DNA of 64,000 nt, from sequence record NC_005083.2. One strand, given 5' to 3'. Shown here piece by piece: positions 5,224-58,513 of the stretch (position 1 is the stretch's first letter; each line of letters starts with the position of its first letter). Below the pieces are notes generated by a model, which saw only the letters and a program-made list of their open reading frames with translations, ran no database searches and was not told the origin of the DNA. A program made the position numbers and the translations under genes.

Positions 5224-5232
5224 GAGGTCAAT

Positions 5233-43643: not shown

Positions 43644-43707
43644 TAGTTTCATTCCATTTATTGAAATTTTTCATATGACAGTATTTATTATGCCGTAAAA
43701 AAGGGCG

Positions 43708-44232
43708 CTATTTGCGCCCTTTACGATTTGCCTTATTTGCTTTTCTTTTTGCTCTACGCAACTCTTTGCGTTTTGCGATTTTGTCTGCACGTCTAACTGC
43801 ATCATAATCCGCAGCACACGACGCAGCAAACGCATCAGGCTTGAAAACGGGTTCTTGGCCCACGTATCCCAAGATAGTGCCCTTAGCTTCGTTATACGCA
43901 ACGTGTGAACGATGGGATGGGTCTGGGTTGATGTCAACGTGAACTTCAAACCCACGAGTACCACACATTGGCTTAACACGCAGAGCAGTTTCACCTGCTT
44001 TATAGACTTCATTCATCAAACGACTACGAATACCATCTTTACACGACATGTACGCTGGTTCAGTTTCGATAGATTTGAATACTTGAGCGCCTTTGCTACC
44101 CTCAAGGTGAATGATGATTACAGTAGCGTAACTAATCATATCACTCTTACGCTTGCTATCACACCCAACATAAATCGTACTGTTCGGATGACTGTTATTG
44201 ATAGCTGTTTCAATTGCTTCCCAATCGAACAT
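43708..44232 (-). CDS. RNase H-like protein (DUF458/YkuK family)
   Basis: IYVGCDS, RLMNEV, EVHVDIN, KPDAFAASCAAD. Confidence 0.8.
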   Translation of the reverse strand: MFDWEAIETAINNSHPNSTIYVGCDSKRKSDMISYATVIIIHLEGSKGAQVFKSIETEPAYMSCKDGIRSRLMNEVYKAGETALRVKPMCGTRGFEVHVDINPDPSHRSHVAYNEAKGTILGYVGQEPVFKPDAFAASCAADYDAVRRADKIAKRKELRRAKRKANKANRKGRK

Positions 44233-44282
44233 TTTCACCTCTGTACAAAAAAGGGCAGCACAATGCCGCCCTTATCACTTAT

Positions 44283-45719
44283 TTAAAAGCTGTAGCGTTC
44301 AACGCCTACAGTTTTCAGCATGATCTTGACTGGCTCAAGCTCACCACCCAACAGTGAAGTCAGGATAGATGGGCTACAACCCGATACCAGTGCAGTACCC
44401 GCTTCGCCAGCTTTAACCGGAACGTTGCCAAGACGACCACGAATGTTCCAGAAGACTAGTTGTGGCATTTCATAGCCAGCACGTGCGTACATAGCTTTGA
44501 TTGCGTCGAAGTTTGCACGTTCGCCACGACCGTACCAGCCACCACCAGTATTTGCTTGGTCGAATTCCATGTCGCTCATGATAAGCAACTTAGTCGGCAT
44601 TTCTTCTTGTGAAAGATTTGCACGTTTCGCACGTTCTAACAGAACGTTGAAGCACTTACCGATGTTTGTGCTCATGTCTTCGCCTGATCGATTCATGTTG
44701 TCAAGACGCTCTTTTAGTGAGCTACCGCGTAACTGGTGGAAGTGCGGATCGCTTGAGAACGAAATGAACTGATCTTTGAAGATGCCTTCATTGCGTTCAG
44801 CAACATAGATGCCAAGAGACATTGCAACTTGCTTACAAGTCACACCTGAACGATCTGCACCTGCGTTGATTGGCGTGCTCATAGAGCCAGACACGTCAAC
44901 AACTGGGATGATGCGCTCATCAGAGCCTTCCATGTAGTTCGGCAGGGCTTTCCATTGCTCGTTCGCTACAGACGCATTACCATGACTAACGCTCTTAACG
45001 ACATCATATGGGAACAAGGCACCAGCGTTGATCTTCGCTTCACCTTTTTGAAGCGACTCGATGTAGCTTGTGTAACGAACAGAAGCGTTACGACCGAATG
45101 CTTTTTGATAACGAGCAGACGCTACAGATGGCAACTTACCGAAGTCGATTGCATCCCATTCTTGCGCACACATCTTCTGTTCAACAGTGTCAGACAAAAG
45201 TGCTAGAATCTTACGCCACTGCTTCGCAGTTACACCAAGAGACTTGATTGTGCGCTTGAACACATGACCGTTTTTGCTGTTCTCGCGTGGGAACCACTTC
45301 GCAGCGAGACCGTTCTTGTCGTTTACAATCGCATTTGACCACAGTGTGATCGCGTCTTTTTCAAGTCTTGTGCCGAAAGCAGAAATCAAGTCGTCGAAGC
45401 GACCTAGTTCTGGAATTTTCGACATTACAGCACGAGCTACGTCAGGCTGCTCATTACAAAGCTTAGTGAATAGAGTACGGAAAGTACCACGTTCACCCGC
45501 ACCACCGCGAACATCACGAGACCACAAAAGAATGCGTGTCGCTAGTTCTGGGTTTTCTGCAAACGCACGACCGAACAGTGTTTTAGACTGATCGTTACCA
45601 CGCATAGCAGCAATACCGAAGAACAAGTTTAGACACTCGTTACCTGAAGTGCTGTGAGTAACTGCACCGTTTGCTGTACGTGAATCGTTTGATTGCATAG
45701 CGTTCATAAATGCTGACAT
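44283..45719 (-). CDS. DUF2828-family TROVE-like plus vWA protein (Ro60-like)
   Basis: RDVRGGAGER, GRFDDL, AAKWFPRE, VDVSGSM, SDMEFD, LVFWN. Confidence 0.85.
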   Translation of the reverse strand: MSAFMNAMQSNDSRTANGAVTHSTSGNECLNLFFGIAAMRGNDQSKTLFGRAFAENPELATRILLWSRDVRGGAGERGTFRTLFTKLCNEQPDVARAVMSKIPELGRFDDLISAFGTRLEKDAITLWSNAIVNDKNGLAAKWFPRENSKNGHVFKRTIKSLGVTAKQWRKILALLSDTVEQKMCAQEWDAIDFGKLPSVASARYQKAFGRNASVRYTSYIESLQKGEAKINAGALFPYDVVKSVSHGNASVANEQWKALPNYMEGSDERIIPVVDVSGSMSTPINAGADRSGVTCKQVAMSLGIYVAERNEGIFKDQFISFSSDPHFHQLRGSSLKERLDNMNRSGEDMSTNIGKCFNVLLERAKRANLSQEEMPTKLLIMSDMEFDQANTGGGWYGRGERANFDAIKAMYARAGYEMPQLVFWNIRGRLGNVPVKAGEAGTALVSGCSPSILTSLLGGELEPVKIMLKTVGVERYSF

Positions 45720-45754
45720 TGTTTATTCCTCATATTAAATTGCTGTAAAATGTC
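45715..45754 (-). promoter_or_regulatory. CAGCAA-motif hairpin sequestering RBS and start codon
   Basis: gacatt-tta-cagcaa...gagga...aATGtc on minus strand. Confidence 0.7.
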
Positions 45755-45810
45755 GTTTTGATGTGATGATTATACACGGATTTGAACCCGTGTAAACACT
45801 TTTTTCAATT

Positions 45811-46125
45811 TTATCGAAAATTCATTCGAGTTAGATTCGTACCGTTTTCGTGAATCTCAACTAGCACGCGACCGCCCGTTTCATAAGACGTTCGGATAGA
45901 ACGATAACCATGCTCTTCGAAGAATGTACGAATAATAGTCGCACCACGCTTGTCTTTATCAGCAGCGTGAATGGGCACTTTTACGATGATAGGGAAACTA
46001 GACCCCGACTCAACTGCGTGCATGAATTCTTTCTCACATTCGCTCGTGTAATGCTCGGTAAGAATTCGTTTTTCTTCTGCTTCACGAGCGTGAATTTGTT
46101 GTTTGAGATCATTATGATTAATCAT
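45811..46125 (-). CDS. hypothetical protein
   Basis: coupled ORF. Confidence 0.55.
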   Translation of the reverse strand: MINHNDLKQQIHAREAEEKRILTEHYTSECEKEFMHAVESGSSFPIIVKVPIHAADKDKRGATIIRTFFEEHGYRSIRTSYETGGRVLVEIHENGTNLTRMNFR

Positions 46126-46457
46126 TGAAACCCCGCTTGTTTGTTTTCTCGAATTGTCAATTTGACAAAAGAATATGAGTAATCTCTCATATCACGCGGA
46201 TCTCCAGAGTAATGTCCGAACTGTGCATCGAAGTTATGAAAACCCTCGCGTCGCATGACGCCTTTGATGAGAGACATCATTTCATCACAACATTCATTGC
46301 GGTCAACATTCACCTGAATCGTGATTGGAAACTGAAACCCAGCAACGCCCCCGATTTTACGTTCGATTGCTTTGCGCATTTCAACTACGAAGAGTTCTTC
46401 ACGAGTTGAGCGATTCTGTTTGACTTTTTGAATTAATGTATCGTATAAATTACCCAT
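46122..46457 (-). CDS. hypothetical protein
   Basis: start moved to ATG 46457 (agga RBS). Confidence 0.55.
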   Translation of the reverse strand: MGNLYDTLIQKVKQNRSTREELFVVEMRKAIERKIGGVAGFQFPITIQVNVDRNECCDEMMSLIKGVMRREGFHNFDAQFGHYSGDPRDMRDYSYSFVKLTIRENKQAGFQ

Positions 46458-46824
46458 CAATATATTCCTTAATCGGCTTAGAAAAGTGACGAATACAAGA
46501 ACTGTCAAGTCGTTTACGACCATCACCATCTATATCAGGTAGTGTGTATTCGTCATTAAACGGCTGACCGCTTTCTTTCGCAATCTCATAGGCATCGGCT
46601 CGATTGAAGTATTCACCACAATAGTTGATAAACCCCTGACCGCGATCCCCGAGTTCGTTTCGATGTTCATATGTACAACCTAGTTCTTTCAATAACTTAA
46701 AGACTGATTGCATGTTTCGACCGAAATGGCAGCTATCAGCAACAACAATGTCGCGCACTTCACCGTTCGGTAGTGTCACTCGAATTGCATTAGCAGCAGA
46801 CGATATTACATTGACGTGCGACAT
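46450..46824 (-). CDS. conserved phage hypothetical protein
   Basis: QGFIN..GEYFNR..A..IAKESGQ motif. Confidence 0.65.
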   Translation of the reverse strand: MSHVNVISSAANAIRVTLPNGEVRDIVVADSCHFGRNMQSVFKLLKELGCTYEHRNELGDRGQGFINYCGEYFNRADAYEIAKESGQPFNDEYTLPDIDGDGRKRLDSSCIRHFSKPIKEYIDG

Positions 46825-47162
46825 GTATCGTACCTCATAAAAATTGAACCAACGCGCTTATACTGACCAGAGTGAGAAAGCAACAGAGCCATTTTACTAT
46901 GACCAACGGGATTGCTTGTCACTAGAACAACAGTGCGCGGAAAATTACGATGATCAATCGCATGAGAGAGAATATCATACCCCTCTCTACCAACATCATC
47001 ACCTAGGTCATTGTCCATGAATAGAGTGATGTCAGTTAGATTTGTGTGCTTGACGAAATTCATACCGTCTTCGAATGTACGAAGAACTAGCTTTTCATCG
47101 TCGCGTACGTAATCTGACGTGAACTTATTAATGTCACGCAGATCATCAATCATAACGTACAT
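46806..47162 (-). CDS. cyclic-phosphate-processing receiver (cREC)-like domain
   Basis: IDDLR..RTFED..MDNDLG..GYDIL. Confidence 0.7.
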   Translation of the reverse strand: MYVMIDDLRDINKFTSDYVRDDEKLVLRTFEDGMNFVKHTNLTDITLFMDNDLGDDVGREGYDILSHAIDHRNFPRTVVLVTSNPVGHSKMALLLSHSGQYKRVGSIFMRYDTCRTSM

Positions 47163-47224
47163 AATATTTCTCTTTCGTTAGTGTTGATAAATACATCATA
47201 CAGGTTCAACAAACGGAAGTCAAC

Positions 47225-49136: not shown

Positions 49137-49225
49137 TGGCGGAGATACTGGGAATCGAACCCAGAGAACGCTATTAACGTCCGACACCTTAGCAGGGTGC
49201 TGTCATACCTTTAGACCATATCTCC
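49137..49225 (-). tRNA. tRNA-Ser(GCT)
   Basis: cloverleaf, long variable arm, CCA. Confidence 0.92.
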
Positions 49226-49230
49226 GTAGA

Positions 49231-49410
49231 TCATTTCTTACCACGCTCTGCTTTGCTAATCTCGACAGCAGCGATTTGCGCGTTGGCTTCTTTCTCAGTG
49301 TCATGAGTACCAAGTACTCGACCTTTAGATGAAAGAGCAACCCATTTGTCGCCACGCTTCTCGACTTTCTCAACAAGCTTGTGATATTCATCAAATGTTT
49401 TAAGTTTCAT
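49231..49410 (-). CDS. 59-aa putative internal head protein (not in ORF track)
   Basis: TATAAATA ~49436; gaggg RBS; MKLKTFDEYHKLVE..GDKW..LGTHDTEKEANAQIAAVEISK. Confidence 0.75.
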   Translation of the reverse strand: MKLKTFDEYHKLVEKVEKRGDKWVALSSKGRVLGTHDTEKEANAQIAAVEISKAERGKK

Positions 49411-49665
49411 GTGTCATCCCTCAGTTAGTTTATTGTATTTATAACTGAACGACTTTTAAACAGTGGCATGCTGCTCCCATGCTCAGACACATATTTGCTC
49501 TTAATGCAGGCGTGTGCCACGCGCAGCGCAGATCCCATTCGATAATTTAATGACCAGCGGGACTCTTAGCAGGTCTACACATAGCCTTTCAGCTATATCT
49601 TCTTTTAAGACCATAGTGTCGTACGGTCTAATCACTCTCTTTCGATTCGCGTTGCTAAGTGAATT

Positions 49666-49742
49666 TGGTGCCCAACCCGAGATTCGAACTCGGATCATCT
49701 AGTGTTTGAAACTAGCGCCTCTGCCAATTGGACTAGTTGGGC
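49666..49742 (-). tRNA. tRNA-Leu(CAA), short variable loop
   Basis: ctagt-ttCAAac-actag, ACCA. Confidence 0.9.
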
Positions 49743-49858
49743 TTGAATAAGCTGCCGCAACTCTTTAATCCCTAACGCCTGTCAGCTTTCGCTCGGCTGA
49801 GACCGTTTTTCAACGGCGGTAGTCTAGCTTCGTGTAGAACGCGGCTTATGCTAGAGTT

Positions 49859-49935
49859 TGGTACGCACGGGCGGATTCGAACCGCCATCCCTGAGATTTT
49901 AAGCCTCATGCCTCTGCCAATTGGACCACGTGCGC
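49859..49935 (-). tRNA. tRNA-Leu(TAA), short variable loop
   Basis: tgagg-ctTAAaa-tctca. Confidence 0.9.
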
Positions 49936-49937
49936 AG

Positions 49938-50011
49938 TGGAGCCCGAACAGAGAATCGAACTCTGACCGCGGGATTTGCAATCCCTCATACTTCCATTAT
50001 ACGATTCGGGC
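49938..50011 (-). tRNA. tRNA-Cys(GCA)
   Basis: ttGCAaa loop, TCCA. Confidence 0.9.
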
Positions 50012-50114
50012 AATTTGTTAGTGCATTGCATGGACTACTGGCGATCTTAATGGGTATCTCAAGCATTCAGAATTCCCATGCGCTACTACAATGCTTTTTT
50101 CGCTAAATGCACTT

Positions 50115-50192
50115 TGGGGTGACAGACGGGGATCGAACCCGCATCTTCCGGAATCACAACCCGGGGGTATTTCCACTTCACCCACTGCCACA
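50115..50192 (-). tRNA. tRNA-His(GTG)
   Basis: ccggg-ttGTGat-tccgg, CCCA. Confidence 0.88.
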
Positions 50193-50245
50193 CCAAAGTA
50201 CACTTTGGGATGTTTACGACATCAAACGAATGCGCTCCCTGTGCA

Positions 50246-50485
50246 TTAATCAGTTTTCTTTAAGTAGATACTATCAGGCGATAGCTCTCTCGTAAACATA
50301 TTTTTGAAATAAATTTCGATGTCATCAGAAGTTGTTGAAGACTCAATTTCAAGAGCACGTTCTAAAATCTTACCGCGTTTATAACCAGCGCGCCAACAGT
50401 CAAACATAAGTCTGTCCATGCGTTTCAGTTTTTCAATTTGGTTTTGATTTACGTATTCGTGAGTTTCAAGTAATACAGGCGTCAT
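50246..50485 (-). CDS. hypothetical protein
   Basis: gaga RBS, between tRNAs. Confidence 0.5.
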   Translation of the reverse strand: MTPVLLETHEYVNQNQIEKLKRMDRLMFDCWRAGYKRGKILERALEIESSTTSDDIEIYFKNMFTRELSPDSIYLKKTD

Positions 50486-50508
50486 AATTTATTTCTCATC
50501 ATAAAGAA

Positions 50509-50582
50509 TGGTAGTCCCTAGTGGAATCGAGCCACTTCTTTCTCTGTGTAAAAGAGACGTACTGCCATTATACTAAGGGACC
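50509..50582 (-). tRNA. tRNA-Val(TAC)
   Basis: tctct-ttTACac-agaga. Confidence 0.9.
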
Positions 50583-50587
50583 AAAAT

Positions 50588-50661
50588 TGGAGCGGGTACA
50601 CGGACTCGAACCGAGACGAACGACTTGGAAGGACGTCATGCTACCATTACATCATACCCGC
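50588..50661 (-). tRNA. tRNA-Gly(TCC)
   Basis: ctTCCaa loop. Confidence 0.9.
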
Positions 50662-50848
50662 ATTGTTAATCTGAAGCGTCGAACAAATCACGTATTGCAC
50701 GCAGATTCGTAAGCTCTACAGTAAGTGTTCTTATAAAGAACGGGTTGGTCTCTTTCGCGAGACGATTTTCAACACAGCGAATCTTATCGCGTATGTTGCC
50801 CTTGCTTAGTGTAAAGTAGTCATGCTTCTTATCCTCTTTGCTTGAATT

Positions 50849-50924
50849 TGGTGGAGACACCGATACTCGAAATCGGATCTAATGGCTTATGAGACCATTG
50901 CTCTACCACTTGAGCTACATCTCC
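50849..50924 (-). tRNA. tRNA-Met/Ile2(CAT)
   Basis: atggt-ctCATaa-gccat. Confidence 0.88.
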
Positions 50925-51154
50925 AAAATCAGTAATTAACTCATTTAATCGCACACGGGCTGACACCATATATTCATGGTCTGAGCGAGGAACCACATAG
51001 TGGGTACTATTACCTCATCTTAGTTTTGATTGTTTTACATGACGATAACTAGAAACGTTCATAATAATGCCACGCGATACTTCCTGTATCACGGCTAACT
51101 GAGTTAGCATATCGTGCCTTGCGGCTGTAGTGTCGTTTCCGACGAATTAAGTAC

Positions 51155-51367
51155 AGACAATACCGAAGTGTTTTTTCGTCTTTGACATGAATCGGAGTTG
51201 ACTATCTTGTTATTCACAACAAGCAAATATCGTCTGTTTCAGCGACGCGCCTATCTGACTATTTCTAGACAGAGAGAATCTTTCCTTTCAAGCTGCACCG
51301 AAGCACCGCCCAGGTTAAGATCATTACCATTTTAAGTAAGATTTTAATTTGTTGCTGTATATTGTCT
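51155..51367 (-). ncRNA. CAGCAA-motif structured RNA (~210 nt)
   Basis: agacaat/attgtct closing stem; ata-cagcaa. Confidence 0.6.
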
Positions 51368-51428
51368 CTCAAACCATGCTCGTGATATGCCGAAGCAAGT
51401 ATCATTCGGCGCATGATAGAGCTTAATT

Positions 51429-51504
51429 TGGCATCCCCAGAGGGATTCGAACCCACAACCCACGACTTAGAAGGTCGTTGCTCTTCCAATTGAGCTATGA
51501 GGAC
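51429..51504 (-). tRNA. tRNA-Arg(TCT)
   Basis: acgac-ctTCTaa-gtcgt. Confidence 0.92.
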
Positions 51505-51580
51505 GTTGAAAGTATTCGATCCATGAGCTATTGCGCAGACGATGGTAGTAAAGAGACTCTGCACTCATGTGATCGAAATT

Positions 51581-51655
51581 TGGTGGACACGCAGGGAGTC
51601 GAACCCTATCTTCCTCATTGCAAGTGAGGCGCTTTCCCAATTAAGCTAACGGCCC
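51581..51655 (-). tRNA. tRNA-Ala(TGC)
   Basis: cctca-ctTGCaa-tgagg. Confidence 0.9.
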
Positions 51656-51666
51656 AATGTTCGTTT

Positions 51667-51876
51667 TTACAACTGTGTGATTGAGATATGATCCCAGCCG
51701 TATAAACCTTCAAGTTCTTCAATAGGCTCACAAACAATGTCAGAAATATATTCAGCAACTTTTGCTTCAATTTCTTCATCAGATAGCTTTTCATCAATTG
51801 CAAAAGCATCTTCATTATTGTTGCCACCGAAATAGCCACCAATGTCATATTCACACCATACTGAAATATAGTTCAT
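51667..51876 (-). CDS. acidic hypothetical protein
   Basis: gaga RBS before ATG 51876. Confidence 0.55.
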   Translation of the reverse strand: MNYISVWCEYDIGGYFGGNNNEDAFAIDEKLSDEEIEAKVAEYISDIVCEPIEELEGLYGWDHISITQL

Positions 51877-51900
51877 GTTATTCTCACAGTTGTTTGAAAA

Positions 51901-51976
51901 TGGTGCCCTGACACGGATTTGAACCGCGAACCTGCTCATTACAAGTGAGCTGCACTGCCAATTGTGCTATCAGGGC
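51901..51976 (-). tRNA. tRNA-Thr(TGT)
   Basis: gctca-ctTGTaa-tgagc. Confidence 0.92.
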
Positions 51977-51982
51977 GTTACT

Positions 51983-52095
51983 GAGTGTTATTACTTGCGT
52001 CGTCCAGACCAGAGATACCAACTCTGAAAGGGAATCGAACCCCAAACATTTCTTTTCGTAAGAAGAATATTAGTAATTGTTTGCTGAAAACACTC
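51983..52095 (-). ncRNA. CAGCAA-motif RNA enclosing a T-arm
   Basis: gagtgtt/aacactc; tt-cagcaa; attact/agtaat; gggTTCGAttccc. Confidence 0.65.
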
Positions 52096-52104
52096 TTCGG
52101 TATT

Positions 52105-52178
52105 TGGCAGGGGATAACGGATTCGAACCGGTACTGCGTGAGTCAAAGTCACGTATGCTGCCTTTACATCAATCCCCT
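52105..52178 (-). tRNA. tRNA-Gln(TTG)
   Basis: cgtga-ctTTGac-tcacg. Confidence 0.92.
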
Positions 52179-52197
52179 ATTATTCTTAAATTATCTT

Positions 52198-52273
52198 TGG
52201 CGGAACCGACGGGTTTCGAACCCGCTACCTTCTCCGTGACAGGGAGACATGCAACCACTTACACCTCGGCTCC
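52198..52273 (-). tRNA. tRNA-Asp(GTC)
   Basis: tctcc-ctGTCac-ggaga. Confidence 0.92.
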
Positions 52274-52495
52274 CCAAAGACAACTTAACGTTGCTTTGTG
52301 CTCGTGCAAACCAAACACTAGCTGAACGACTTCTTGATTTCTTAGTTGTACTACACATTCCCTCGCTAAAGGGCGTCATCGTTCTTGTTTTTAACAAATG
52401 CTATGAAAGTGAGATCTTGCTATGCAGGAGGTTTCAAATCTCTGCACACAAGCAGACATCGCAACCAACGCTCTCAAACATTGTCATGGTCAAAC

Positions 52496-52571
52496 TGGCG
52501 CCTTATGTTGGACTCGAACCAACGACTCTCTGGTTAACAGCCAGACACTCTACCGACTGAGTTAATAAGGC
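52496..52571 (-). tRNA. tRNA-Asn(GTT)
   Basis: tctgg-ctGTTaa-ccaga. Confidence 0.92.
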
Positions 52572-52577
52572 AAAATA

Positions 52578-52652
52578 TGGCGGGCGTGGAGAATTTCGAA
52601 ATCTCGACCTGACGGTTAACAGCCGTCTGCTCTGCCTCTGAGCTACACACCC
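52578..52652 (-). tRNA. tRNA-Asn(GTT), second copy
   Basis: gacgg-ctGTTaa-ccgtc. Confidence 0.92.
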
Positions 52653-52664
52653 TTTAAATTAAAC

Positions 52665-52722
52665 AGCAATCCTTTTCTCTTTTTCCAAATAAAAGTTTTG
52701 TATTGTTTGCTGAAAGATTGCT
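52665..52722 (-). ncRNA. short CAGCAA-motif RNA
   Basis: agcaatc/gattgct; ttt-cagcaa. Confidence 0.6.
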
Positions 52723-52730
52723 TAATTCTG

Positions 52731-52925
52731 TTACGACGTAAACTGCTCGACTTTACAAGAGTCAACATCGTCAAACTTTTCGATTCGTTTAGCTAACATT
52801 TTAGCCTTTCGCTCAATCGAGCGATCTTCGTAACCGAATTCAGATTTGTTATTGTCACAAGCTAATGCGCTCGACTTGACAACAGTCGAATCATTCATTA
52901 CCATCACTAGTCTGTACATAAACAC
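52731..52925 (-). CDS. hypothetical protein
   Basis: gagg RBS. Confidence 0.5.
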   Translation of the reverse strand: MFMYRLVMVMNDSTVVKSSALACDNNKSEFGYEDRSIERKAKMLAKRIEKFDDVDSCKVEQFTS

Positions 52926-52935
52926 CTCTGATAAT

Positions 52936-53009
52936 TGGCAGGGACATAGAGATTCGAACTCTAACGAACGGGTTTGGAATCCGTCATGCTGCCGTTACAT
53001 CATGTCCCT
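52936..53009 (-). tRNA. tRNA-Trp(CCA)
   Basis: ttCCAaa loop. Confidence 0.88.
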
Positions 53010-53015
53010 AAAATT

Positions 53016-53089
53016 TGGTAGCCCCAGACAGACTCGAACTGTCAACGTGCGATTATCGGTCGCGTGTTTTACCGTTAAACTATGGAGCT
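53016..53089 (-). tRNA. tRNA-Ile(GAT)
   Basis: gcga-ccGATaa-tcgc. Confidence 0.88.
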
Positions 53090-53153
53090 AAAGTGAGCAC
53101 ATTTCAGTGCTCGTGTTAATCGGTTAAGTGACTAAACTTCCCGGTTAACTAAT

Positions 53154-53252
53154 TGGCGGAAGACTAGGGATTCGAACCCTAACATCACCTCCCGGTGACC
53201 GACGGTTTTCAAGACCGTTGCCGCTACCCAGAATCTTTCGGCTAAGCCTTCC
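53154..53252 (-). tRNA. tRNA-Ser(TGA)
   Basis: acggt-ctTGAaa-accgt, long variable arm. Confidence 0.88.
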
Positions 53253-53259
53253 ATTAATT

Positions 53260-53334
53260 TGGTAGCGAGTGCCAGAATCGAACTGACCTAAACTAGCTTA
53301 TGAGACTAGTGAGTTCACCAGAACTCTAACTCGC
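53260..53334 (-). tRNA. tRNA-Met(CAT)
   Basis: ctagt-ctCATaa-gctag. Confidence 0.85.
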
Positions 53335-53437
53335 AATTATTCAACAGCTTGCGTTCTTTGGTCTGTTTATCGCTGTCTGAACTGAGTTCGCCGAGCGATC
53401 AATAGATTAAGTTGAATTGCAGTATGCAAGCTAAATT

Positions 53438-53523
53438 TGGTGGAGCGTAGAGGAATCGAACCTCTCTTCCCATTACGGGACACGGATTTACAGTCCGCTG
53501 CCGCACCTTGCGGCTTACGCTCC
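53438..53523 (-). tRNA. tRNA-Tyr(GTA)
   Basis: gcgga-ctGTAaa-tccgt, long variable arm. Confidence 0.92.
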
Positions 53524-53529
53524 AGAATT

Positions 53530-53603
53530 TGGTACTCGATACGGGAGTCGAACCCGTCCTACTTCCTTGAAAGGGAAGTGACCTACCGATAGTCGAATCG
53601 AGC
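53530..53603 (-). tRNA. tRNA-Glu(TTC)
   Basis: cttcc-ctTTCaa-ggaag. Confidence 0.92.
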
Positions 53604-53666
53604 ATTAAATTGTATATTGATTTGCAAGCTAATCAACTCGCAAAGCGATACACAATGTATCTAATT

Positions 53667-53743
53667 TGGTACGCCGCCCTGGACTCGAACCAGACACCTG
53701 AGAGTTAAAAGCTCCCTGCTCTTCCATGATGAGCTACCGACGC
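53667..53743 (-). tRNA. tRNA-Lys(TTT)
   Basis: gggag-ctTTTaa-ctctc. Confidence 0.92.
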
Positions 53744-53754
53744 ATTATAAAATC

Positions 53755-53829
53755 TGGTGGGTCGCAAGAGATTCGAACTCTCACCGTTCTGGTTAAAAGC
53801 CAGATGTACTACCGTTATACGAACGACCC
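53755..53829 (-). tRNA. tRNA-Lys(TTT), second copy
   Basis: tctgg-ctTTTaa-ccaga. Confidence 0.92.
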
Positions 53830-53835
53830 AGAATG

Positions 53836-53910
53836 TGGTGCACCCCCTCGGAATCGAACCGAGCACTGCGGGACTTCAATCCGCCGCTTTTCCTGATAAG
53901 CTAAGGGTGC
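53836..53910 (-). tRNA. tRNA-Phe(GAA)
   Basis: ttGAA loop; imperfect top pair of anticodon stem. Confidence 0.85.
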
Positions 53911-53911
53911 A

Positions 53912-53989
53912 TGGTACGCAAGAAGAGATTCGAACTCTTAACTTCTGGTTTCTAAGACCAGTGCCTCTGCCAGATTGGGCTACTTGCGC
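53912..53989 (-). tRNA. tRNA-Leu(TAG), short variable loop
   Basis: ctggt-ctTAGaa-accag. Confidence 0.9.
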
Positions 53990-54024
53990 ATTGTTTGTTT
54001 TTGAACGTTACTTCGTTCTTCTTC

Positions 54025-54146
54025 ATTGTACATGATGTTTATATCGTTGTAAACATCTTTTTTGAAAAACTTTTCATTAACTTTTGAATGATATTTCGCT
54101 TTTCTCTATTGTACATGATGTTTATATCGTTGTAAACATCTTTTTA
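54025..54146 (-). promoter_or_regulatory. duplicated 39-bp early-type promoter
   Basis: identical repeats 54025..54063 and 54108..54146; GTTTAC(A)..TACAAT on minus strand. Confidence 0.8.
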
Positions 54147-54300
54147 AATTTATTTTGAAGAACTTAACGTTTTCATTTTTCTATGTGTTAATCTTAACAC
54201 TCGCTCAAGACATCTTAAACACTAATTTGTGAAAAAGTTCGTTAAATTCTATCATCACGACAGTACTTAACGAGATACGGTCCTAAGCGTATCAAATTAA

Positions 54301-54428
54301 TTCAGAATGGTGAGACTTGAACTCACTTCGAGTAATAGCGTAAACTAACAGTTGTTGCCAGAGGCTATCAATTATTCTCTACCGAGTATGTTGCAACTCT
54401 GCATTTCCCCATTTCTAGGCATTCTGAA
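54301..54428 (-). ncRNA. tRNA-like RNA with large anticodon-position insert
   Basis: cagaatg/cattctg acceptor; gtgagTTCAAgtctcac T arm; no 7-nt anticodon loop. Confidence 0.6.
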
Positions 54429-54431
54429 ATA

Positions 54432-54507
54432 TGGCACCCCACAGAAGATTCGAACTTCTAACCTGCGCCTTCGTAGGACGCTGCTCTTCCAATTGAGCTA
54501 GTAGGGC
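54432..54507 (-). tRNA. tRNA-Arg(ACG)
   Basis: ctACGaa loop. Confidence 0.92.
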
Positions 54508-54514
54508 ATTAAAC

Positions 54515-54591
54515 TGGTCCGTGACAAGCGATTCGAACGCTTAACTTCTCCGCCCCAAACGGAGTACTCTACCAGATTGAGCTAGTCACGG
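54515..54591 (-). tRNA. tRNA-Pro(TGG)
   Basis: ctccg-ttTGGgg-cggag. Confidence 0.92.
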
Positions 54592-54600
54592 ATTTTAAAT

Positions 54601-54674
54601 TGGTCGGGACGAAGAGACTCGAACTCTTACCACATGCTCCCAAAGCATGAACGCTACCTTTACGCCACGTCCCG
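54601..54674 (-). tRNA. tRNA-Pro(TGG), second copy
   Basis: catgc-ttTGGga-gcatg. Confidence 0.92.
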
Positions 54675-55042
54675 TTTGTTCTTTAACTTTGTTTATCATA
54701 CTCTGCTTTCAAAGTACCTTAAACAAAATTTTTGATTTTCTTTCGCCCATAAAAAAGGACGCTACGTGCGTCCTCAAGTATACTTCTATGTTATACTATT
54801 GGACTACGTTTGTGGAGACCACTCTTGTTTCGCACACGGATTCGCTAGATACACGAATTCTGAGCGCAGAAAATCGCTGCGTAAAATCATATCAGAATGT
54901 GTATTCGAATGTGTCATGGAAACTCTCTAAACGTTAAAATAAAAATGTTTTTGTTTGTATAATAGTACTTATAACACCAAATTTGACGATTTGCGGTATT
55001 TTCGCAGAAAATTGAAAAAAACTTCAACTTTCTGCGATTTTC

Positions 55043-55288
55043 TTATCGACCTAGGTGTTTTCGCTTGTTCATTTCAACGAGGATTTCATCGTTGTAATGA
55101 CGGTTCAGTTCAACATACTTCTTGTGCTGATCTGAAGTCAACTCGTTGGTGTCATTCAGATGTTTCAAGAATCCAAGAGGTTTGCGAAACGACTTGCGAT
55201 ACTCGTTCAGACGCTCGTCAGTTAGATTATGCAGTTGTTTCGGAGTCAGTAACGTTTTATTGATGTCAAAACTCATGTTGTACCTCAC
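55043..55288 (-). CDS. hypothetical protein
   Basis: gagg RBS; start uncertain. Confidence 0.5.
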   Translation of the reverse strand: MRYNMSFDINKTLLTPKQLHNLTDERLNEYRKSFRKPLGFLKHLNDTNELTSDQHKKYVELNRHYNDEILVEMNKRKHLGR

Positions 55289-55300
55289 TTATTATAAAAT

Positions 55301-55416
55301 TGGTAGTCGGGGCTGGATTCGAACCAGCGACCACGTGCTTAACAGGCAATTGAAGGAGTGCTGGAGCGATACTTGTCAGTATCATTCTTCGTGCTCTACC
55401 ACTGAGCTACCCGACT
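55301..55416 (-). ncRNA. tRNA-mimic RNA (GACA hairpin, CAGCAC)
   Basis: acceptor, D arm, T arm, ACCA; gatact-GACA-agtatc-gctc-CAGCAC. Confidence 0.8.
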
Positions 55417-55421
55417 ATGAA

Positions 55422-55943
55422 TTATTTAACTTTGAACTTCAAATTACGCCAGTCAAAGTTTCGTTTGTTCTTTGTGTTGTAGAACGTGCCCCAATCAATA
55501 GCAATCGGACAGTTCTTACTACCTACACGAGCGATAAAGACATCGTGAGTCTCGCTGTAACGCTCTCTAAGCTCTTTTAAACGCTTATCGTAGTTAGCGA
55601 TATACTCTGCACACGCTTTGTTGTAAGCTGCTTTAGAGAAGCGTTCGTCACTCGAAAATACATTACCCAGATAAGGTCGAATAACACGAACTCGTTCTTT
55701 AGACCAACCCATACTAAAGCTGTTTTCAATCTCACCTGAGATTTCACCAGTCTTCTTACATCTAGCAAGAATGACCCAGCAACGTTCACGCCGAAAATCT
55801 TTTCGTACGTACACGTTAACGTGCTTGTCAATGTACTCTTGATAACGAGCGTTATACTCAGCACGCAGTTTATTGCGCACTTCAGGCGACATTGCAGCCC
55901 GTTCTTCTTTCGAAAACGCTTGTGCGAATTTCAATGGTTTCAT
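55422..55943 (-). CDS. hypothetical basic protein
   Basis: gagga RBS before ATG 55943. Confidence 0.6.
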   Translation of the reverse strand: MKPLKFAQAFSKEERAAMSPEVRNKLRAEYNARYQEYIDKHVNVYVRKDFRRERCWVILARCKKTGEISGEIENSFSMGWSKERVRVIRPYLGNVFSSDERFSKAAYNKACAEYIANYDKRLKELRERYSETHDVFIARVGSKNCPIAIDWGTFYNTKNKRNFDWRNLKFKVK

Positions 55944-55956
55944 TATAATTTCCTCT

Positions 55957-56196
55957 TGGCGCCGCTCGTGTGAATCGAACACACGTCAAACACAACACCT
56001 CGTCCACCCAATTAGAGTTTCGAAGTAAGAGCTAATCAGCATTTCGGAGCAGTCGAGCGTTATTTCTACGAGTGAGCTTTCGACAACTCACACGCACTTT
56101 CTACCCGGTCCCAGTGATTCGGTACCAACGCAGGTTGCGAACCTACGTCTGCACTAATGCTGGGAAAACACTGCGTATTGTACACCAGTTAGCGGC
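55957..56196 (-). ncRNA. 240-nt RNA with tRNA-like termini
   Basis: gccgct/agcggc-GCCA; gtgtgTTCGAttcacac; several internal hairpins. Confidence 0.7.
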
Positions 56197-56198
56197 AT

Positions 56199-56429
56199 TT
56201 AAAGATAGCTATCAAAGACAGCATCATCAACTTCTTCAATATTGATGTCAGCGTAACACTCATTCGCAATTGCTTGAATTTCATCTATTGAAACTGTACC
56301 TGCGTACAATACAACAGCGTCGTTCGGAATCACGACATCACACATGTATTTGTTAAACATTGCAGTTCTGAAATCAGAATCAACAGAGTAACCGTGCATT
56401 GATGTGATAACTAGCAATTTATGTGACAT
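56199..56429 (-). CDS. hypothetical protein
   Basis: gagga RBS; own promoter upstream. Confidence 0.6.
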   Translation of the reverse strand: MSHKLLVITSMHGYSVDSDFRTAMFNKYMCDVVIPNDAVVLYAGTVSIDEIQAIANECYADINIEEVDDAVFDSYL

Positions 56430-56508
56430 AATGTTTTCCTCGTGTAGTTGATAATGTGTATACTACACGTTGATGAAACGCCTGTCAACAACTTTTTCAA
56501 ATTATTTT

Positions 56509-56585
56509 TGGTAGCCCCTCTCGGATTCGAACCGAGAACCTGACGATTATGAGTCGTCTGCTACTACCGTTACAGCTAAGGGGCT
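56509..56585 (-). tRNA. tRNA-Met/Ile2(CAT)
   Basis: gacga-ctCATaa-tcgtc. Confidence 0.9.
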
Positions 56586-56966: not shown

Positions 56967-57090
56967 TGGTGGAGAGTGATGGATTTGAACCACCGACCAA
57001 AAGATTTACCTAGTTATTAAGGTTTGCAGCATGAATGCTTGTCAGTATTCTTTAACATTCTTTTGCTCTACCAGACTGAGCTAACTCTCC
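56967..57090 (-). ncRNA. tRNA-mimic RNA (GACA hairpin, CTGCAA)
   Basis: ggagagt/actctcc-ACCA; gaatact-GACA-agcattc-atg-CTGCAA. Confidence 0.8.
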
Positions 57091-57096
57091 ATAATT

Positions 57097-57214
57097 TGAG
57101 GGTGAAGTACAGGACTCGAACCTGCGACCTCCGGCGTGCATGTAAATGCAGAATGAAATCTTATCAGACTTCGTTTTTTGAGCCGGCATTCTAACCAACT
57201 GAACTAACTTCACC
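57097..57214 (-). ncRNA. tRNA-mimic RNA on an Asp-like shell (GATA hairpin, CTGCAT)
   Basis: ggtgaag/cttcacc; ccggc/gccgg; gaagtct-GATA-agatttc-att-CTGCAT. Confidence 0.8.
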
Positions 57215-57326: not shown

Positions 57327-57460
57327 TATAGTTGCGGGTGCAGGATTCGAACCTACATCACGATCTTATGAATGATATGCGAAATTGATTGCCGTACAGA
57401 TTCTTATCAGAATCAGTTTTGTGCTACGTGTGCTACCACTTACACCAACCCGCAACTATA
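57327..57460 (-). ncRNA. tRNA-mimic RNA (GATA hairpin, CGGCAA), extended acceptor
   Basis: 13-15 bp terminal stem; gattct-GATA-agaatc-tgta-CGGCAA; aggTTCGAatcct. Confidence 0.8.
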
Positions 57461-57718: not shown

Positions 57719-57845
57719 TGGTCGAGTGTAACGGAATCGAACCGTTCCCACGATCTCCCTATGATATGCGTAAATTGGTTGCTGAATATAATCATGTCTG
57801 ATTACAGTATGCTACGTGTGCTGCCACTACACCAACACTCGACCA
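57719..57845 (-). ncRNA. tRNA-mimic RNA (GACA hairpin, CAGCAA), paralog of 57327
   Basis: taatca-GACA-tgatta-tatt-CAGCAA; aacggTTCGAttccgtt. Confidence 0.8.
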
Positions 57846-58258: not shown

Positions 58259-58513
58259 TTAAACGGAAATGATAATGCCGCTTTCAGTCTCACCTCGTTC
58301 AAGCGCAGCGTGCTTGATCTGAAGTTGTGATACTGCTTGCTGAAGTTCAATAATAGCTTTGTCATAAAGCTTGTTGTTCTCTTTAAGCAAAGCAATCTGA
58401 TCGGTCTGCATACCAATGATGTACGTTAGTAGAACAACGTTCTCATCAGTCGTCAGCGTTTCAGGCGCTTCATTGTACTTCTTCAGCACCGCTTCGGTAG
58501 ATAGATCAGTCAT
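58259..58513 (-). CDS. coiled-coil hypothetical protein
   Basis: coupled to gp57B. Confidence 0.6.
   Translation of the reverse strand: MTDLSTEAVLKKYNEAPETLTTDENVVLLTYIIGMQTDQIALLKENNKLYDKAIIELQQAVSQLQIKHAALERGETESGIIISV

What the first reader, a model, noticed from the sequence alone, without database searches (positions are those of the whole stretch)
43708..47162. RNA repair / quality-control neighbourhood beside the tRNA array
Seen: an RNase H-like DUF458 gene, the TROVE/vWA gene and a cREC-like receiver domain lie co-oriented downstream of the tRNA/ncRNA array, and the 2H phosphoesterase gp57B lies upstream. Known: Ro60, cREC and 2H domains are linked to handling 2',3'-cyclic-phosphate RNA ends. 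No RtcB or Rnl ligase is visible in this window. Inference: a module countering host tRNA-cleaving defences.
Basis: inference. Interest (0 to 1): 0.65.

Follow-up and report, generated by a model that had tools for sequence, protein, structure and literature searches.

The report
Phage Ro60-like, nuclease and cREC genes
Just after its tRNA genes, Vibrio phage KVP40 carries intact genes for a Ro60-shaped RNA-binding ring, an RNase H-type nuclease and a cREC esterase, but only the ring (with its own small partner RNAs) and the nuclease (with tRNA genes) recur across phages, so this is a lineage-specific gathering of RNA-handling genes and not a fixed repair module.

Summary
The window is Vibrio phage KVP40 (genome 124001-188000). 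Pfam confirms DUF458/YkuK (43708-44238), DUF2828+DUF7788 (44283-45719) and cREC (46806-47162), all on the minus strand downstream of 28 tRNA genes.

- The DUF2828 protein misses the Pfam TROVE model, but its predicted fold matches Ro60 over its whole length.
- The three genes lie together only in KVP40-like phages. Among 80 environmental loci of the Ro60-like gene, DUF458 is present in 2 and cREC in 1.
- The constant companion of the Ro60-like gene is a small RNA module, a roughly 7-bp helix followed by 2-3 nt and CAGCAA. In KVP40 the module sits on five tRNA-shaped RNAs and on the gene's own mRNA leader.
- DUF458 is tied to tRNA genes: 77 of 80 loci carry tRNAs, 49 of them within 100 nt.
- cREC is linked to neither gene.
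- gp57B is Acb1, the anti-CBASS nuclease, not an RNA-end healer.
- Rnl1, PseT and Rnl2 exist elsewhere in the genome, at least 90 kb away. There is no RtcB.

Most likely this is a phage Ro60/Y-RNA-type particle plus a tRNA-array nuclease. Repair of cleaved tRNA is plausible but not shown. Earlier notes of this scan reached similar readings on KVP40 and related phage DNA.

The parts
43708..44232 (-). KVP40.0299, a DUF458/YkuK RNase H-like nuclease (annotated start GTG 44238; the likely start is ATG 44232), with a Lys/Arg-rich C-terminal tail
   Evidence: PF04308 E 5.9e-17. D27, E77, D102 and D144 are invariant in 14 homologues. The AF2 model has pLDDT 84, with weak Foldseek hits to EndoV, NurA, RNase HI and PIWI. 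An intrinsic terminator overlaps the stop codon.
44251..44273 (-). Terminator-like hairpin (10 bp, 6 G-C, followed by a T run) between the Ro60-like gene and DUF458
44283..45719 (-). KVP40.0300, a Ro60-like ring protein: alpha-solenoid plus vWA domain with a complete MIDAS site (DUF2828 + DUF7788)
   Evidence: Pfam. The AF2 model has pLDDT 77.7. The 12 Foldseek matches to the PDB at E below 0.001 are all Ro60 entries, E 5e-8 to 2e-5, TM 0.48-0.59 over about 520 columns. D275, S277, S279, T351 and D383 are invariant.
45715..45754 (-). Copy of the RNA module in the mRNA leader of KVP40.0300: a 6-bp helix (GACAUU/AAUGUC), then UUA and CAGCAA, enclosing the Shine-Dalgarno sequence and the AUG
   Evidence: Sequence and script. 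Equivalent leader modules abut the SD in IMG/VR loci L130, L139, L153 and L154.
45769..45796 (-). Sigma-70-like promoter (TTTACA, 16 nt, TATAAT; 11 of 12 matches) for the Ro60-like gene
45811..46125 (-). KVP40.0301, a small protein of unknown function (phrog_15675)
   Evidence: no family with a known function
46122..46460 (-). KVP40.0302, a small protein of unknown function (phrog_15681)
46450..46824 (-). KVP40.0303, a T4 Y16D/Arn.3-like protein of unknown function
   Evidence: phrog_839; Atlas look-alikes carry PF26092 T4_Y16D
46806..47162 (-). KVP40.0304, a stand-alone cREC (cyclic-phosphate-processing receiver-like) domain; first gene of a 4-gene unit with overlapping stops and starts
   Evidence: PF20274 E 3.8e-15. 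D6, D7, R9 and D50 are invariant across six phage cREC proteins. A promoter-like site lies at 47195-47223.
49137..56585 (-). Array of 28 tRNA genes upstream of the three genes on the same strand
55304..55416 (-). tRNA-shaped RNA (annotated tRNA-Pseudo-3). The anticodon loop is replaced by a hairpin with a UGAYAA loop, then 3 nt and CNGCA.
   Evidence: Rfam tRNA 49.8 bits with a 54-nt insertion; module found; alignment A1
56970..57090 (-). tRNA-shaped RNA (tRNA-Pseudo-4) with the same module in its anticodon arm
57101..57213 (-). tRNA-shaped RNA (tRNA-Pseudo-5) with the same module
57331..57453 (-). Fourth tRNA-shaped RNA with the module. Acceptor, D and T arms were read by eye; Rfam does not call it.
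   Evidence: module at 57390-57414; sequence
57722..57843 (-). Fifth tRNA-shaped RNA with the module (8-bp hairpin, then UU and CAGCAA)

Best explanation
The stretch brings together three separately transcribed RNA-handling units at the end of KVP40's tRNA/ncRNA array. They are not one co-evolving module.

(1) KVP40.0300 is a Ro60-shaped ring protein of the DUF2828 family.
- Its cognate ligand is most likely a small RNA module: a 6-8 bp helix whose strand runs on into 2-3 nt plus CAGCAA or CNGCA.
- KVP40 carries this module on five tRNA-shaped RNAs in the array and on the protein's own mRNA leader, where it encloses the ribosome-binding site and the start codon.
- I infer that the protein forms Ro60/Y-RNA-like particles with these RNAs and represses its own translation.

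(2) KVP40.0299 is a metal-dependent RNase H1-type nuclease. In phages its family is encoded inside or beside tRNA arrays and tRNA-repair genes. I infer that it cuts or trims phage tRNA precursors or damaged tRNAs and leaves 5'-P/3'-OH ends.

(3) The cREC gene heads its own four-gene unit. By published prediction only, it is a phosphoesterase for cyclic phosphates. Its link to the other two is confined to the KVP40 lineage.

Shown here: the domains, the fold, the conserved residues, the gene order, the promoters and terminators, and the co-occurrence statistics. Inferred: RNA binding, autoregulation, the nuclease substrate, and any role in repairing host-inflicted tRNA damage.
For: Domains.

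The Ro60-like protein:
- Whole-length Ro60 fold, best hit phage phiLo Ro60 (9l5y).
- Complete MIDAS site.

The RNA module lies beside the Ro60-like gene in unrelated phages:
- Campylobacter PC14, 2 copies
- Listeria LP-125, 3 copies
- Bacillus Tsamsa, 3 copies
- Mycobacterium phage GuuelaD, 3 copies, one with a permuted tRNA-like core
- Staphylococcus S-CoN_Ph11, 3 copies
- Felixounavirus UAB_Phi87, 4 copies

In 80 IMG/VR loci I counted 82 strict modules on the gene's strand, 21 on the opposite strand and 15.4 in shuffles; 53 of 80 loci carry one. Leader copies abut the SD in KVP40 and in four IMG/VR loci. The tRNA-shaped carriers are conserved, with covarying hairpins, in KVP40, Cronobacter phage S13 and Aeromonas phage Aeh1.

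DUF458:
- The DEDD tetrad is invariant.
- 77 of 80 IMG/VR loci hold tRNAs, 49 within 100 nt, and 780 of 783 tRNAs are co-oriented with the gene.
- It lies beside a CCA-adding enzyme in S13.
- It lies inside the tRNA array next to Pth in RcXuper.
- It lies in a run DUF458, CCA-adding enzyme, Thg1, RnlA, PNK in Rhizobium phage RHph_I1_18.
- Ro60-like and DUF458 genes are adjacent in the same order in Vibrio phage EniLVp02, which has no cREC.

Precedent: phage phiLo Ro60 binds two phage-encoded Y-like RNAs and host PNPase (PMC12135203).
Against: - No experiment or RNA-seq data were available for KVP40, so expression, binding and cleavage are untested.
- The protein does not match Pfam TROVE, and no PDB Ro60 sequence reaches significance. 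The Ro60 relation rests on a predicted fold of moderate confidence.
- The module is short and my scanner has background: 21 hits on the opposite strand against 15 in shuffles.
- Only 24 of 80 Ro60-like loci have tRNAs within 6 kb, and only 3 of 80 DUF458 loci have the Ro60-like gene. The pairing of these two genes is therefore a minority arrangement.
- The 80 DUF458 loci fall into only 6 clusters at 70% identity, so the independent lineages are few.
- The complex prediction could not be run.
Confidence: 0.55

Rival explanations
1. DUF458, the Ro60-like protein, cREC and gp57B work together as one module. It heals 2',3'-cyclic-phosphate ends of tRNAs cut by host anticodon nucleases (PrrC or PARIS type) and hands them to ligases encoded elsewhere.
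For: - All three domains are intact.
- cREC is predicted in the literature to open cyclic phosphates and is linked to RNA ligases in other phages (PMC7824862, PMC9503650).
- The Ro60-like gene lies beside an Rnl2-type ligase in GAP32 and within 1.3-5.6 kb of RtcB, an RNA ligase and a HAD protein in Listeria LP-125.
- An Rnl1-type ligase lies within about 2 kb in 5 of 80 IMG/VR loci.
- KVP40 encodes Rnl1, PseT, Rnl2 and a CCA-adding-like enzyme.
Against: - The trio co-occurs only in KVP40-like phages.
- There are three separate transcription units, with a terminator between the Ro60-like gene and DUF458.
- gp57B is Acb1, an anti-CBASS enzyme (PMC9117128).
- The RNase H-type chemistry of DUF458 neither makes nor needs cyclic phosphates.
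- The KVP40 ligases are at least 90 kb away.
- PseT already provides the cyclic phosphodiesterase and phosphatase of the classical T4 pathway.
Confidence: 0.15
2. Host-exonuclease capture, as shown for Thermus phage phiLo. The Ro60-like ring and its tRNA-shaped RNAs tether and damp host PNPase or another 3'-5' exonuclease. This protects phage transcripts or blunts host defences that need that nuclease. DUF458 and cREC would be unrelated neighbours.
For: - The best structural match is phiLo Ro60.
- That protein, with Yrl1 and Yrl2, forms RYPER-like complexes with host PNPase and attenuates it (PMC12135203).
- Bacterial Y RNAs with tRNA-like domains tether Rsr to PNPase (PMC4201824).
Against: - The sequence family and the RNA motif differ: CAGCAA here, a CGAA bulge in phiLo.
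- No PNPase-binding element has been identified.
- This reading does not explain why DUF458 and the Ro60-like gene stay adjacent in EniLVp02 and KVP40-like phages.
Confidence: 0.15
3. Decoy reading. The tRNA-shaped RNAs lack an anticodon loop. They soak up host tRNA-targeting nucleases or tRNA-sensing defence proteins, and the Ro60-like ring only stabilises them.
For: - Five tRNA-shaped RNAs have intact acceptor, D and T arms but no anticodon loop.
- They are conserved in three Straboviridae genera.
Against: - In most phages the module RNAs beside the Ro60-like gene are short hairpins with no tRNA body, so the tRNA shape is not needed for the protein-RNA pairing.
- No defence target is known.
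Confidence: 0.1
4. Pure juxtaposition. The three genes are functionally unrelated cargo in a plastic early region, next to each other only by descent within one phage lineage.
For: - cREC is absent beside the other two genes everywhere outside KVP40-like phages.
- The units are transcribed separately.
- Three small genes of unknown function lie between cREC and the Ro60-like gene.
Against: - Ro60-like and DUF458 genes lie within 0.4-5 kb in four Straboviridae genera with 44-53% DUF458 identity.
- Each is independently tied to tRNA arrays.
Confidence: 0.2

Closest known systems
Ro60/Rsr with Y RNAs (YrlA), including Thermus phage phiLo Ro60 with Yrl1/Yrl2 (PMC12135203, PMC4201824)
   Same: - Whole-length fold: an alpha-solenoid ring plus a vWA domain with a MIDAS site.
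- Small structured RNAs are encoded next to the gene, some with tRNA-like domains.
- In mycobacteriophage GuuelaD, one neighbouring RNA has a permuted T-arm/acceptor/D-arm core closed by a terminal helix, as in YrlA.
   Different: - No match to Pfam TROVE or to Ro60 sequences.
- The RNA motif is a helix plus NUN-CAGCAA, not the Ro-binding bulged helix or the CGAA bulge.
- Rfam YrlA scores only 21.6-29.8 bits against a threshold of 69.
- In KVP40 the tRNA body is not permuted: the module replaces the anticodon loop.
- A copy sits on the protein's own mRNA leader.
ROT/TROVE, cREC and RNA-repair themes of jumbo phages (Iyer et al. 2021, PMC7824862; PMC9503650)
   Same: [quoted passage not shown] They also define cREC as a predicted cyclic-phosphate esterase of phages.
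   Different: - In the text I could read, they do not describe DUF458 as a tRNA-array gene, the CAGCAA module, or a DUF458/TROVE/cREC neighbourhood.
- The cREC contexts they report (RNA ligases, Nudix, sirtuin, 2H) are absent around the KVP40 cREC.
B. subtilis YkuK/DUF458, RNase H-like superfamily clade E (PMC3985635)
   Same: Pfam family membership. An RNase H1-type active site, including the extra Glu in helix alpha-1.
   Different: The phage members are stand-alone genes embedded in tRNA arrays, and KVP40-like ones add a Lys/Arg-rich tail. No member has a known substrate.
T4 tRNA repair pathway (Rnl1 + PseT) against PrrC
   Same: KVP40 encodes both enzymes, plus Rnl2.
   Different: They lie 112-115 kb from this stretch and are not linked to it. 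Nothing here replaces the ligase.
Dictyostelium Class I RNAs (PMC7919456)
   Same: Same architecture: RNAs of 42-65 nt with a short stem joining the ends and a conserved single-stranded motif directly 3' of the 5' stem strand.
   Different: The held text does not spell out the motif, so I could not verify the sequence match claimed in earlier scan notes. The known protein partner, Rnp1A/CIBP, is an RRM protein.

Membership tests
Ro60 / TROVE | Match to the Pfam TROVE model (PF05731) or to Ro60 sequences | tested here: not met
   No hit at E 0.1 in the whole genome. It is not among the Pfam hits. PDB Ro60 chains score E 1.7 even with a profile.
Ro60 / TROVE | Ring of HEAT-like repeats followed by a vWA domain | tested here: met
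   Foldseek on the AF2 model (pLDDT 77.7): the 12 matches at E below 0.001 are all Ro60 entries, TM 0.48-0.59 over about 510-560 columns.
Ro60 / TROVE | MIDAS motif DxSxS plus T plus D in the vWA domain | tested here: met
   D275, S277, S279, T351 and D383 are invariant in 34 sequences.
Ro60 / TROVE | Cognate small RNA encoded next to the gene | tested here: inconclusive
   A conserved helix+CAGCAA module lies beside the gene in at least 7 phage lineages and is enriched with a strand bias in 80 loci. It is not a YrlA or Y RNA by Rfam, and binding is untested.
DUF2828 / DUF7788 | Pfam matches above the gathering score | tested here: met
   100.9 bits against a cut-off of 29, and 155.9 bits against 27.1.
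DUF458 / YkuK RNase H-like | Pfam match and a D-E-D-D catalytic tetrad | tested here: met
   62.4 bits against a cut-off of 25. D27, E77, D102 and D144 are invariant.
DUF458 / YkuK RNase H-like | RNase H-like fold | tested here: inconclusive
   Only weak Foldseek hits (E 1.5e-3 to 1e-2) to Ppx/GppA, EndoV, NurA, RNase HI/HII and PIWI. These are consistent with the fold, but none is significant.
DUF458 / YkuK RNase H-like | Nuclease activity and substrate | not testable with these tools
   No member has been characterised (PMC3985635).
cREC | Pfam match and the conserved aspartates of the receiver-like site | tested here: met
   56.8 bits against a cut-off of 27. D6, D7, R9 and D50 are invariant in six phage sequences.
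cREC | Genomic association with RNA ligases or NAD/ADP-ribose-processing genes, the context that defined the family | tested here: not met
   The KVP40 neighbours are a Y16D-like protein and two unknown small proteins. The ligases are at least 90 kb away.
Conserved three-gene RNA-repair module (DUF458 + Ro60-like + cREC) | Co-occurrence of the three genes across unrelated phages | tested here: not met
   - DUF458 in 0 of 8 and cREC in 1 of 8 (distant) Ro60-like phages.
- cREC in 0 of 5 DUF458 phages that carry the Ro60-like gene.
- DUF458 in 2 and cREC in 1 of 80 Ro60-like loci.
- The Ro60-like gene in 3 of 80 DUF458 loci.
RtcB-based repair | RtcB ligase present | tested here: not met
   No PF01139 match in the genome; the controls were positive.
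Acb1 (for gp57B) | Pfam Acb1 match above the cut-off | tested here: met
   157.9 bits against a cut-off of 27. T4 gene 57B is Acb1 (PMC9117128).

The most novel reading that the evidence does not exclude
DUF2828 proteins are the protein half of a widespread, undescribed Ro60-type ribonucleoprotein. Its RNA half is any transcript that carries the helix+NUN-CAGCAA module: free hairpins, tRNA-shaped carriers, permuted tRNA-like RNAs, and the protein's own mRNA leader. In T4-like phages this particle works with the tRNA-array nuclease DUF458 to survey or repair phage tRNAs. The same protein family in eukaryotes might then be the missing partner of orphan RNAs with the same architecture, such as the Dictyostelium Class I RNAs.
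Probability: 0.3. Interest if true: 0.8.

Novelty: new variant of a known kind. Interest (0 to 1): 0.55.

Why it matters
Ro60/Y-RNA particles are a classical RNA quality-control system, and their roles in bacteria and phages are only now being worked out. A second, sequence-unrelated branch appears here. It occurs in more than 700 sequenced phages, has its own RNA recognition module, and shows signs of autoregulation. If confirmed, it would widen that system considerably and give it a tractable phage model.

The tight embedding of the uncharacterised DUF458 nuclease in phage tRNA arrays gives a first concrete, testable lead to its substrate.

For annotation, the result also warns against reading the KVP40 neighbourhood as a ready-made anti-anticodon-nuclease module, and against counting gp57B (Acb1) as an RNA-repair enzyme.

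Tried and rejected
No verdict.
- Rfam YrlA: 29.8 bits across the junction of two adjacent tRNA-shaped genes, and 21.6 bits in GuuelaD, against a threshold of 69. I rejected membership.
- Sequence searches of the PDB with both proteins and both profiles gave nothing meaningful.
- NCBIfam gave no family for any of the seven proteins.
- Proteins 0301 and 0302 have no informative family. Protein 0303 resembles only T4 Y16D, of unknown function.
- The strict pattern CTGAYAAG...CNGCA also hits three copies of a coding repeat (ADKWTTA) in the tail-fibre genes at 39613, 42189 and 42720. These are false positives.
- The GAYA-loop form of the module was found only in Straboviridae. The general form had to be searched for separately.
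- Burroughs and Aravind 2016 (NAR) and the supplements of PMC7824862 and PMC4201824 are not held. I therefore could not check whether they list KVP40 or the mycobacteriophage RNAs.
- The text of the Class I RNA paper does not spell out its motif.

Full report
**Identity and observation.** The window is Vibrio phage KVP40 (Schizotequatrovirus, 244,834 bp), genome positions 124001-188000, at 100% identity. The minus strand carries, in order of transcription:
- an array of 28 tRNA genes at 49137-56585;
- several small ORFs;
- KVP40.0304 (46806-47162), .0303, .0302 and .0301;
- KVP40.0300 (44283-45719);
- KVP40.0299 (43708-44238);
- the distal tail-fibre gene.

KVP40.0299 matches PF04308 RNaseH_like/DUF458 (E 5.9e-17). 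KVP40.0300 matches PF11443 DUF2828 (E 9e-29) and PF25043 DUF7788 (E 1e-45). KVP40.0304 matches PF20274 cREC_REC (E 3.8e-15). PHROGs places each in a phage family, and 0300 falls in phrog_850, 'RNA-binding protein'.

**The Ro60-like protein.**
- KVP40.0300 does not match the Pfam TROVE model.
- No Ro60 chain of the PDB is found by sequence, and a 34-sequence profile reaches only E 1.7 at the MIDAS region.
- An AlphaFold2 model (pLDDT 77.7, pTM 0.75) matches Ro60 over its whole length. The 12 Foldseek matches at E below 0.001 are all Ro60 entries. They include Thermus phage phiLo Ro60 (9l5y, 9kop), Xenopus Ro60 with RNA (2i91, 1yvr, 1yvp), Deinococcus Rsr (2nvo) and human Ro60. E-values run from 5e-8 to 2e-5 and TM from 0.48 to 0.59 over about 520 columns.
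- The vWA MIDAS residues D275, S277, S279, T351 and D383 are invariant.

It therefore works like a Ro60 ring, but it belongs to a separate sequence family. That family is large: more than 7,800 relatives in the word search and 711 phage records. The records include Felixounavirus, Herelleviridae of Listeria, Enterococcus and Staphylococcus, Campylobacter Fletchervirus, cluster-L mycobacteriophages (there annotated 'Ro-like RNA binding protein'), Bacillus Tsamsa, Aeh1 and GAP32.

**What travels with the Ro60-like gene.** In named phages the gene lies directly beside tRNA arrays in Aeh1, UAB_Phi87, PC14, LP-125 and Tsamsa. It lies beside an Rnl2-type ligase in GAP32. It lies 1.3-5.6 kb from RtcB, an RNA ligase and a HAD protein in LP-125.

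I had already seen that three KVP40 'pseudo-tRNAs' are perfect tRNA bodies in which a 45-54 nt insert replaces the anticodon loop. The insert holds a covarying hairpin with a UGAYAA loop followed by 3 nt and CNGCA. It is shared with Cronobacter phage S13 and Aeromonas phage Aeh1. Two more such RNAs lie at 57331-57453 and 57722-57843.

Earlier notes of this scan then gave me the more general wording of the module: a helix of about 7 bp, then NUN, then CAGCAA. I tested that with my own scripts.
- Copies lie on the gene's strand, within a few hundred bases of it, in PC14 (2), LP-125 (3), Tsamsa (3), mycobacteriophage GuuelaD (3), Staphylococcus phage S-CoN_Ph11 (3) and UAB_Phi87 (4).
- One GuuelaD copy closes a permuted T-arm/acceptor/D-arm core, the YrlA architecture. 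Rfam YrlA scores it at only 21.6 bits against a threshold of 69.
- In 80 IMG/VR loci of the gene, a strict definition (helix of at least 7 bp, at most one G-U pair, 2-3 nt spacer, CAGCAA, span of at most 140 nt) gives 82 hits on the gene's strand, 21 on the other strand and 15.4 in shuffles. 53 of the 80 loci carry at least one.
- In KVP40 one copy lies in the 0300 leader (45715-45754). Its helix GACAUU/AAUGUC encloses the Shine-Dalgarno sequence and contains the AUG. Leader copies abutting the SD recur in IMG/VR loci L130, L139, L153 and L154.

The most constant companion of this protein is thus an RNA module, not another protein. A copy on the protein's own leader is the classical signature of autogenous translational control.

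**The nuclease.** DUF458/YkuK is placed in the RNase H1 clade of the RNase H-like superfamily (PMC3985635).
- D27, E77, D102 and D144 are invariant in phage homologues. This is an RNase H1-type tetrad, which in this family goes with metal-dependent cleavage giving 5'-P/3'-OH ends.
- The AF2 model (pLDDT 84) gives only weak hits to EndoV, NurA, RNase HI/HII and PIWI.
- Its genomic context is informative. Of 80 IMG/VR loci, 77 contain tRNA genes. The median distance to the nearest tRNA is 54 nt, 49 loci have one within 100 nt, and 780 of 783 tRNAs are co-oriented with the gene. These loci collapse to only 6 clusters at 70% identity.
- Named phages add independent cases. In S13 it lies beside tk and a CCA-adding enzyme, near two tRNA-shaped module RNAs. 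In RcXuper it lies inside the array, next to peptidyl-tRNA hydrolase. In Rhizobium phage RHph_I1_18 it heads a run DUF458, CCA-adding enzyme, Thg1, RnlA, PNK. In Milchi it lies among tRNAs, 5 kb from the Ro60-like gene.
- I found no paper describing this association.

**Is the trio a module?** No.
- DUF458 is absent from all 8 diverse phages that carry the Ro60-like gene. cREC is present in 1 of the 8 (GAP32), at least 40 kb from the Ro60-like gene.
- Among 7 DUF458 phages outside the KVP40 group, the Ro60-like gene is clearly present in 4 and weakly in a fifth. It is adjacent in EniLVp02, 4.4 kb away in S13, 5 kb in Milchi and distant in RHph_I1_18. cREC is present in one (BUDD), 40 kb away.
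- In IMG/VR, DUF458 occurs in 2 and cREC in 1 of 80 Ro60-like loci. The Ro60-like gene occurs in 3 of 80 DUF458 loci.
- cREC's main home is the T5-like phages, which have neither partner.
- Within the KVP40 lineage the order DUF458, Ro60-like, then cREC is kept, with cREC down to 71% and the Ro60-like protein down to 77% identity.
- The three genes are separate transcription units. A promoter-like site at 47223-47195 precedes the overlapping genes cREC, 0303, 0302 and 0301. A near-consensus promoter at 45796-45769 precedes 0300. A strong terminator at 44273-44251 follows 0300. DUF458 has its own terminator.

**The rest of the claimed toolkit.** gp57B (58506-58961) is a 2H-fold protein, but it is Acb1 (PF23474, E 1.7e-46). 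T4 gene 57B was shown to degrade CBASS signals such as 3'3'-cGAMP (PMC9117128). It should not be counted as an RNA-end enzyme. KVP40 does encode the classical T4 repair pair, Rnl1 (52418-53563) and PseT (55200-56117), as well as Rnl2 (about 77.5 kb) and a CCA-adding-like enzyme (226.8 kb). It has no RtcB and no KptA. None of these is near the stretch.

**Mechanism, with the status of each step.**
- Shown: the intact domains, the Ro60 fold, the MIDAS and DEDD residues and the cREC aspartates, the transcription signals, and the co-occurrence patterns.
- Inferred, most likely: the ring binds the helix+CAGCAA module. It thereby forms particles with the five tRNA-shaped RNAs and other module RNAs of the array, and it represses its own mRNA.
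- Inferred, likely: DUF458 acts on transcripts of the tRNA array, in maturation or in removal or trimming of damaged tRNAs.
- Inferred from the literature only: cREC opens cyclic phosphates (PMC7824862, PMC9503650).

Whether the particle repairs host-cleaved tRNAs, captures a host exonuclease as phiLo Ro60 does (PMC12135203), or serves as a decoy cannot be decided from sequence.

**Comparison and novelty.** The general ideas are published: ROT/TROVE proteins in some jumbo phages, cREC, and phage Ro60 with Y-like RNAs (PMC7824862, PMC4201824, PMC12135203). What I did not find described:
- the DUF2828 branch paired with a CAGCAA module, which is absent from Rfam;
- its tRNA-embedded and leader-embedded forms;
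- the embedding of DUF458 in tRNA arrays.

Earlier notes of this scan reached similar readings on other windows of KVP40 and on related phage DNA. My tests agree with them. They also agree with the note that cREC is only loosely linked.

The architecture of the free module RNAs matches that of the Dictyostelium Class I RNAs (PMC7919456). I could not verify the motif sequence from the held text.

**Limits.** No RNA-seq run was available and no complex prediction could be run. The Ro60 model is of moderate confidence. The RNA module is short. The IMG/VR samples are phylogenetically clumped.

Noticed in passing
window 58506-58961 (-): gp57B is an Acb1 anti-CBASS nuclease (PF23474, E 1.7e-46). RefSeq labels it 'RNA ligase', which looks like a misannotation.
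   Followed up: partly
L023 (Rhizobium phage RHph_I1_18) 97-4900: A run of DUF458, a small ORF, a CCA-adding enzyme, DUF1127, Thg1-like tRNA-His guanylyltransferase, RnlA and polynucleotide kinase. This is the clearest tRNA-repair context for DUF458.
   Followed up: partly
L013 (Mycobacterium phage GuuelaD) 7472-7736: Three helix+CAGCAA RNAs lie directly downstream of the 'Ro-like' DUF2828 gene. The middle one (7533-7663) encloses a permuted tRNA-like core (T arm, acceptor, D arm) that matches only the core of Rfam YrlA (21.6 bits).
   Followed up: partly
L008 (Aeromonas phage Aeh1) 11193-11314; L016 (Cronobacter phage S13) 1146-1266 and 1276-1388: Genes annotated as a 122-nt tRNA-Val, a 121-nt tRNA-Ser and a 113-nt tRNA-OTHER are tRNA-shaped carriers of the same hairpin+CNGCA module as the KVP40 pseudo-tRNAs.
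   Followed up: partly
window 39613-39632, 42189-42208, 42720-42739 (-): The two large tail-fibre genes (37039-40296 and 40368-43652) share a repeated coding motif (ADKWTTARTLTL...). By chance it matches the RNA-module pattern.
   Followed up: no
window 44232-44238 (-): The annotated GTG start of KVP40.0299 is probably wrong. The ATG two codons downstream has a GAGGTG Shine-Dalgarno sequence and matches the N-termini of the homologues.
   Followed up: yes
window 51584-51655 (-): Rfam calls an extra tRNA here (44.9 bits) that ARAGORN misses; it is annotated tRNA-Pseudo-1. The window also has free-standing helix+CAGCAA candidates at 51983-52095 and 52665-52722 (-).
   Followed up: no
L019 (Salmonella phage Spc35, T5-like) 4992-5309: In T5-like phages, cREC lies next to the endolysin and about 0.7 kb from a YqeY-like 'tRNA amidotransferase' and a tRNA-Arg. 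The genome has neither DUF458 nor the Ro60-like gene.
   Followed up: partly
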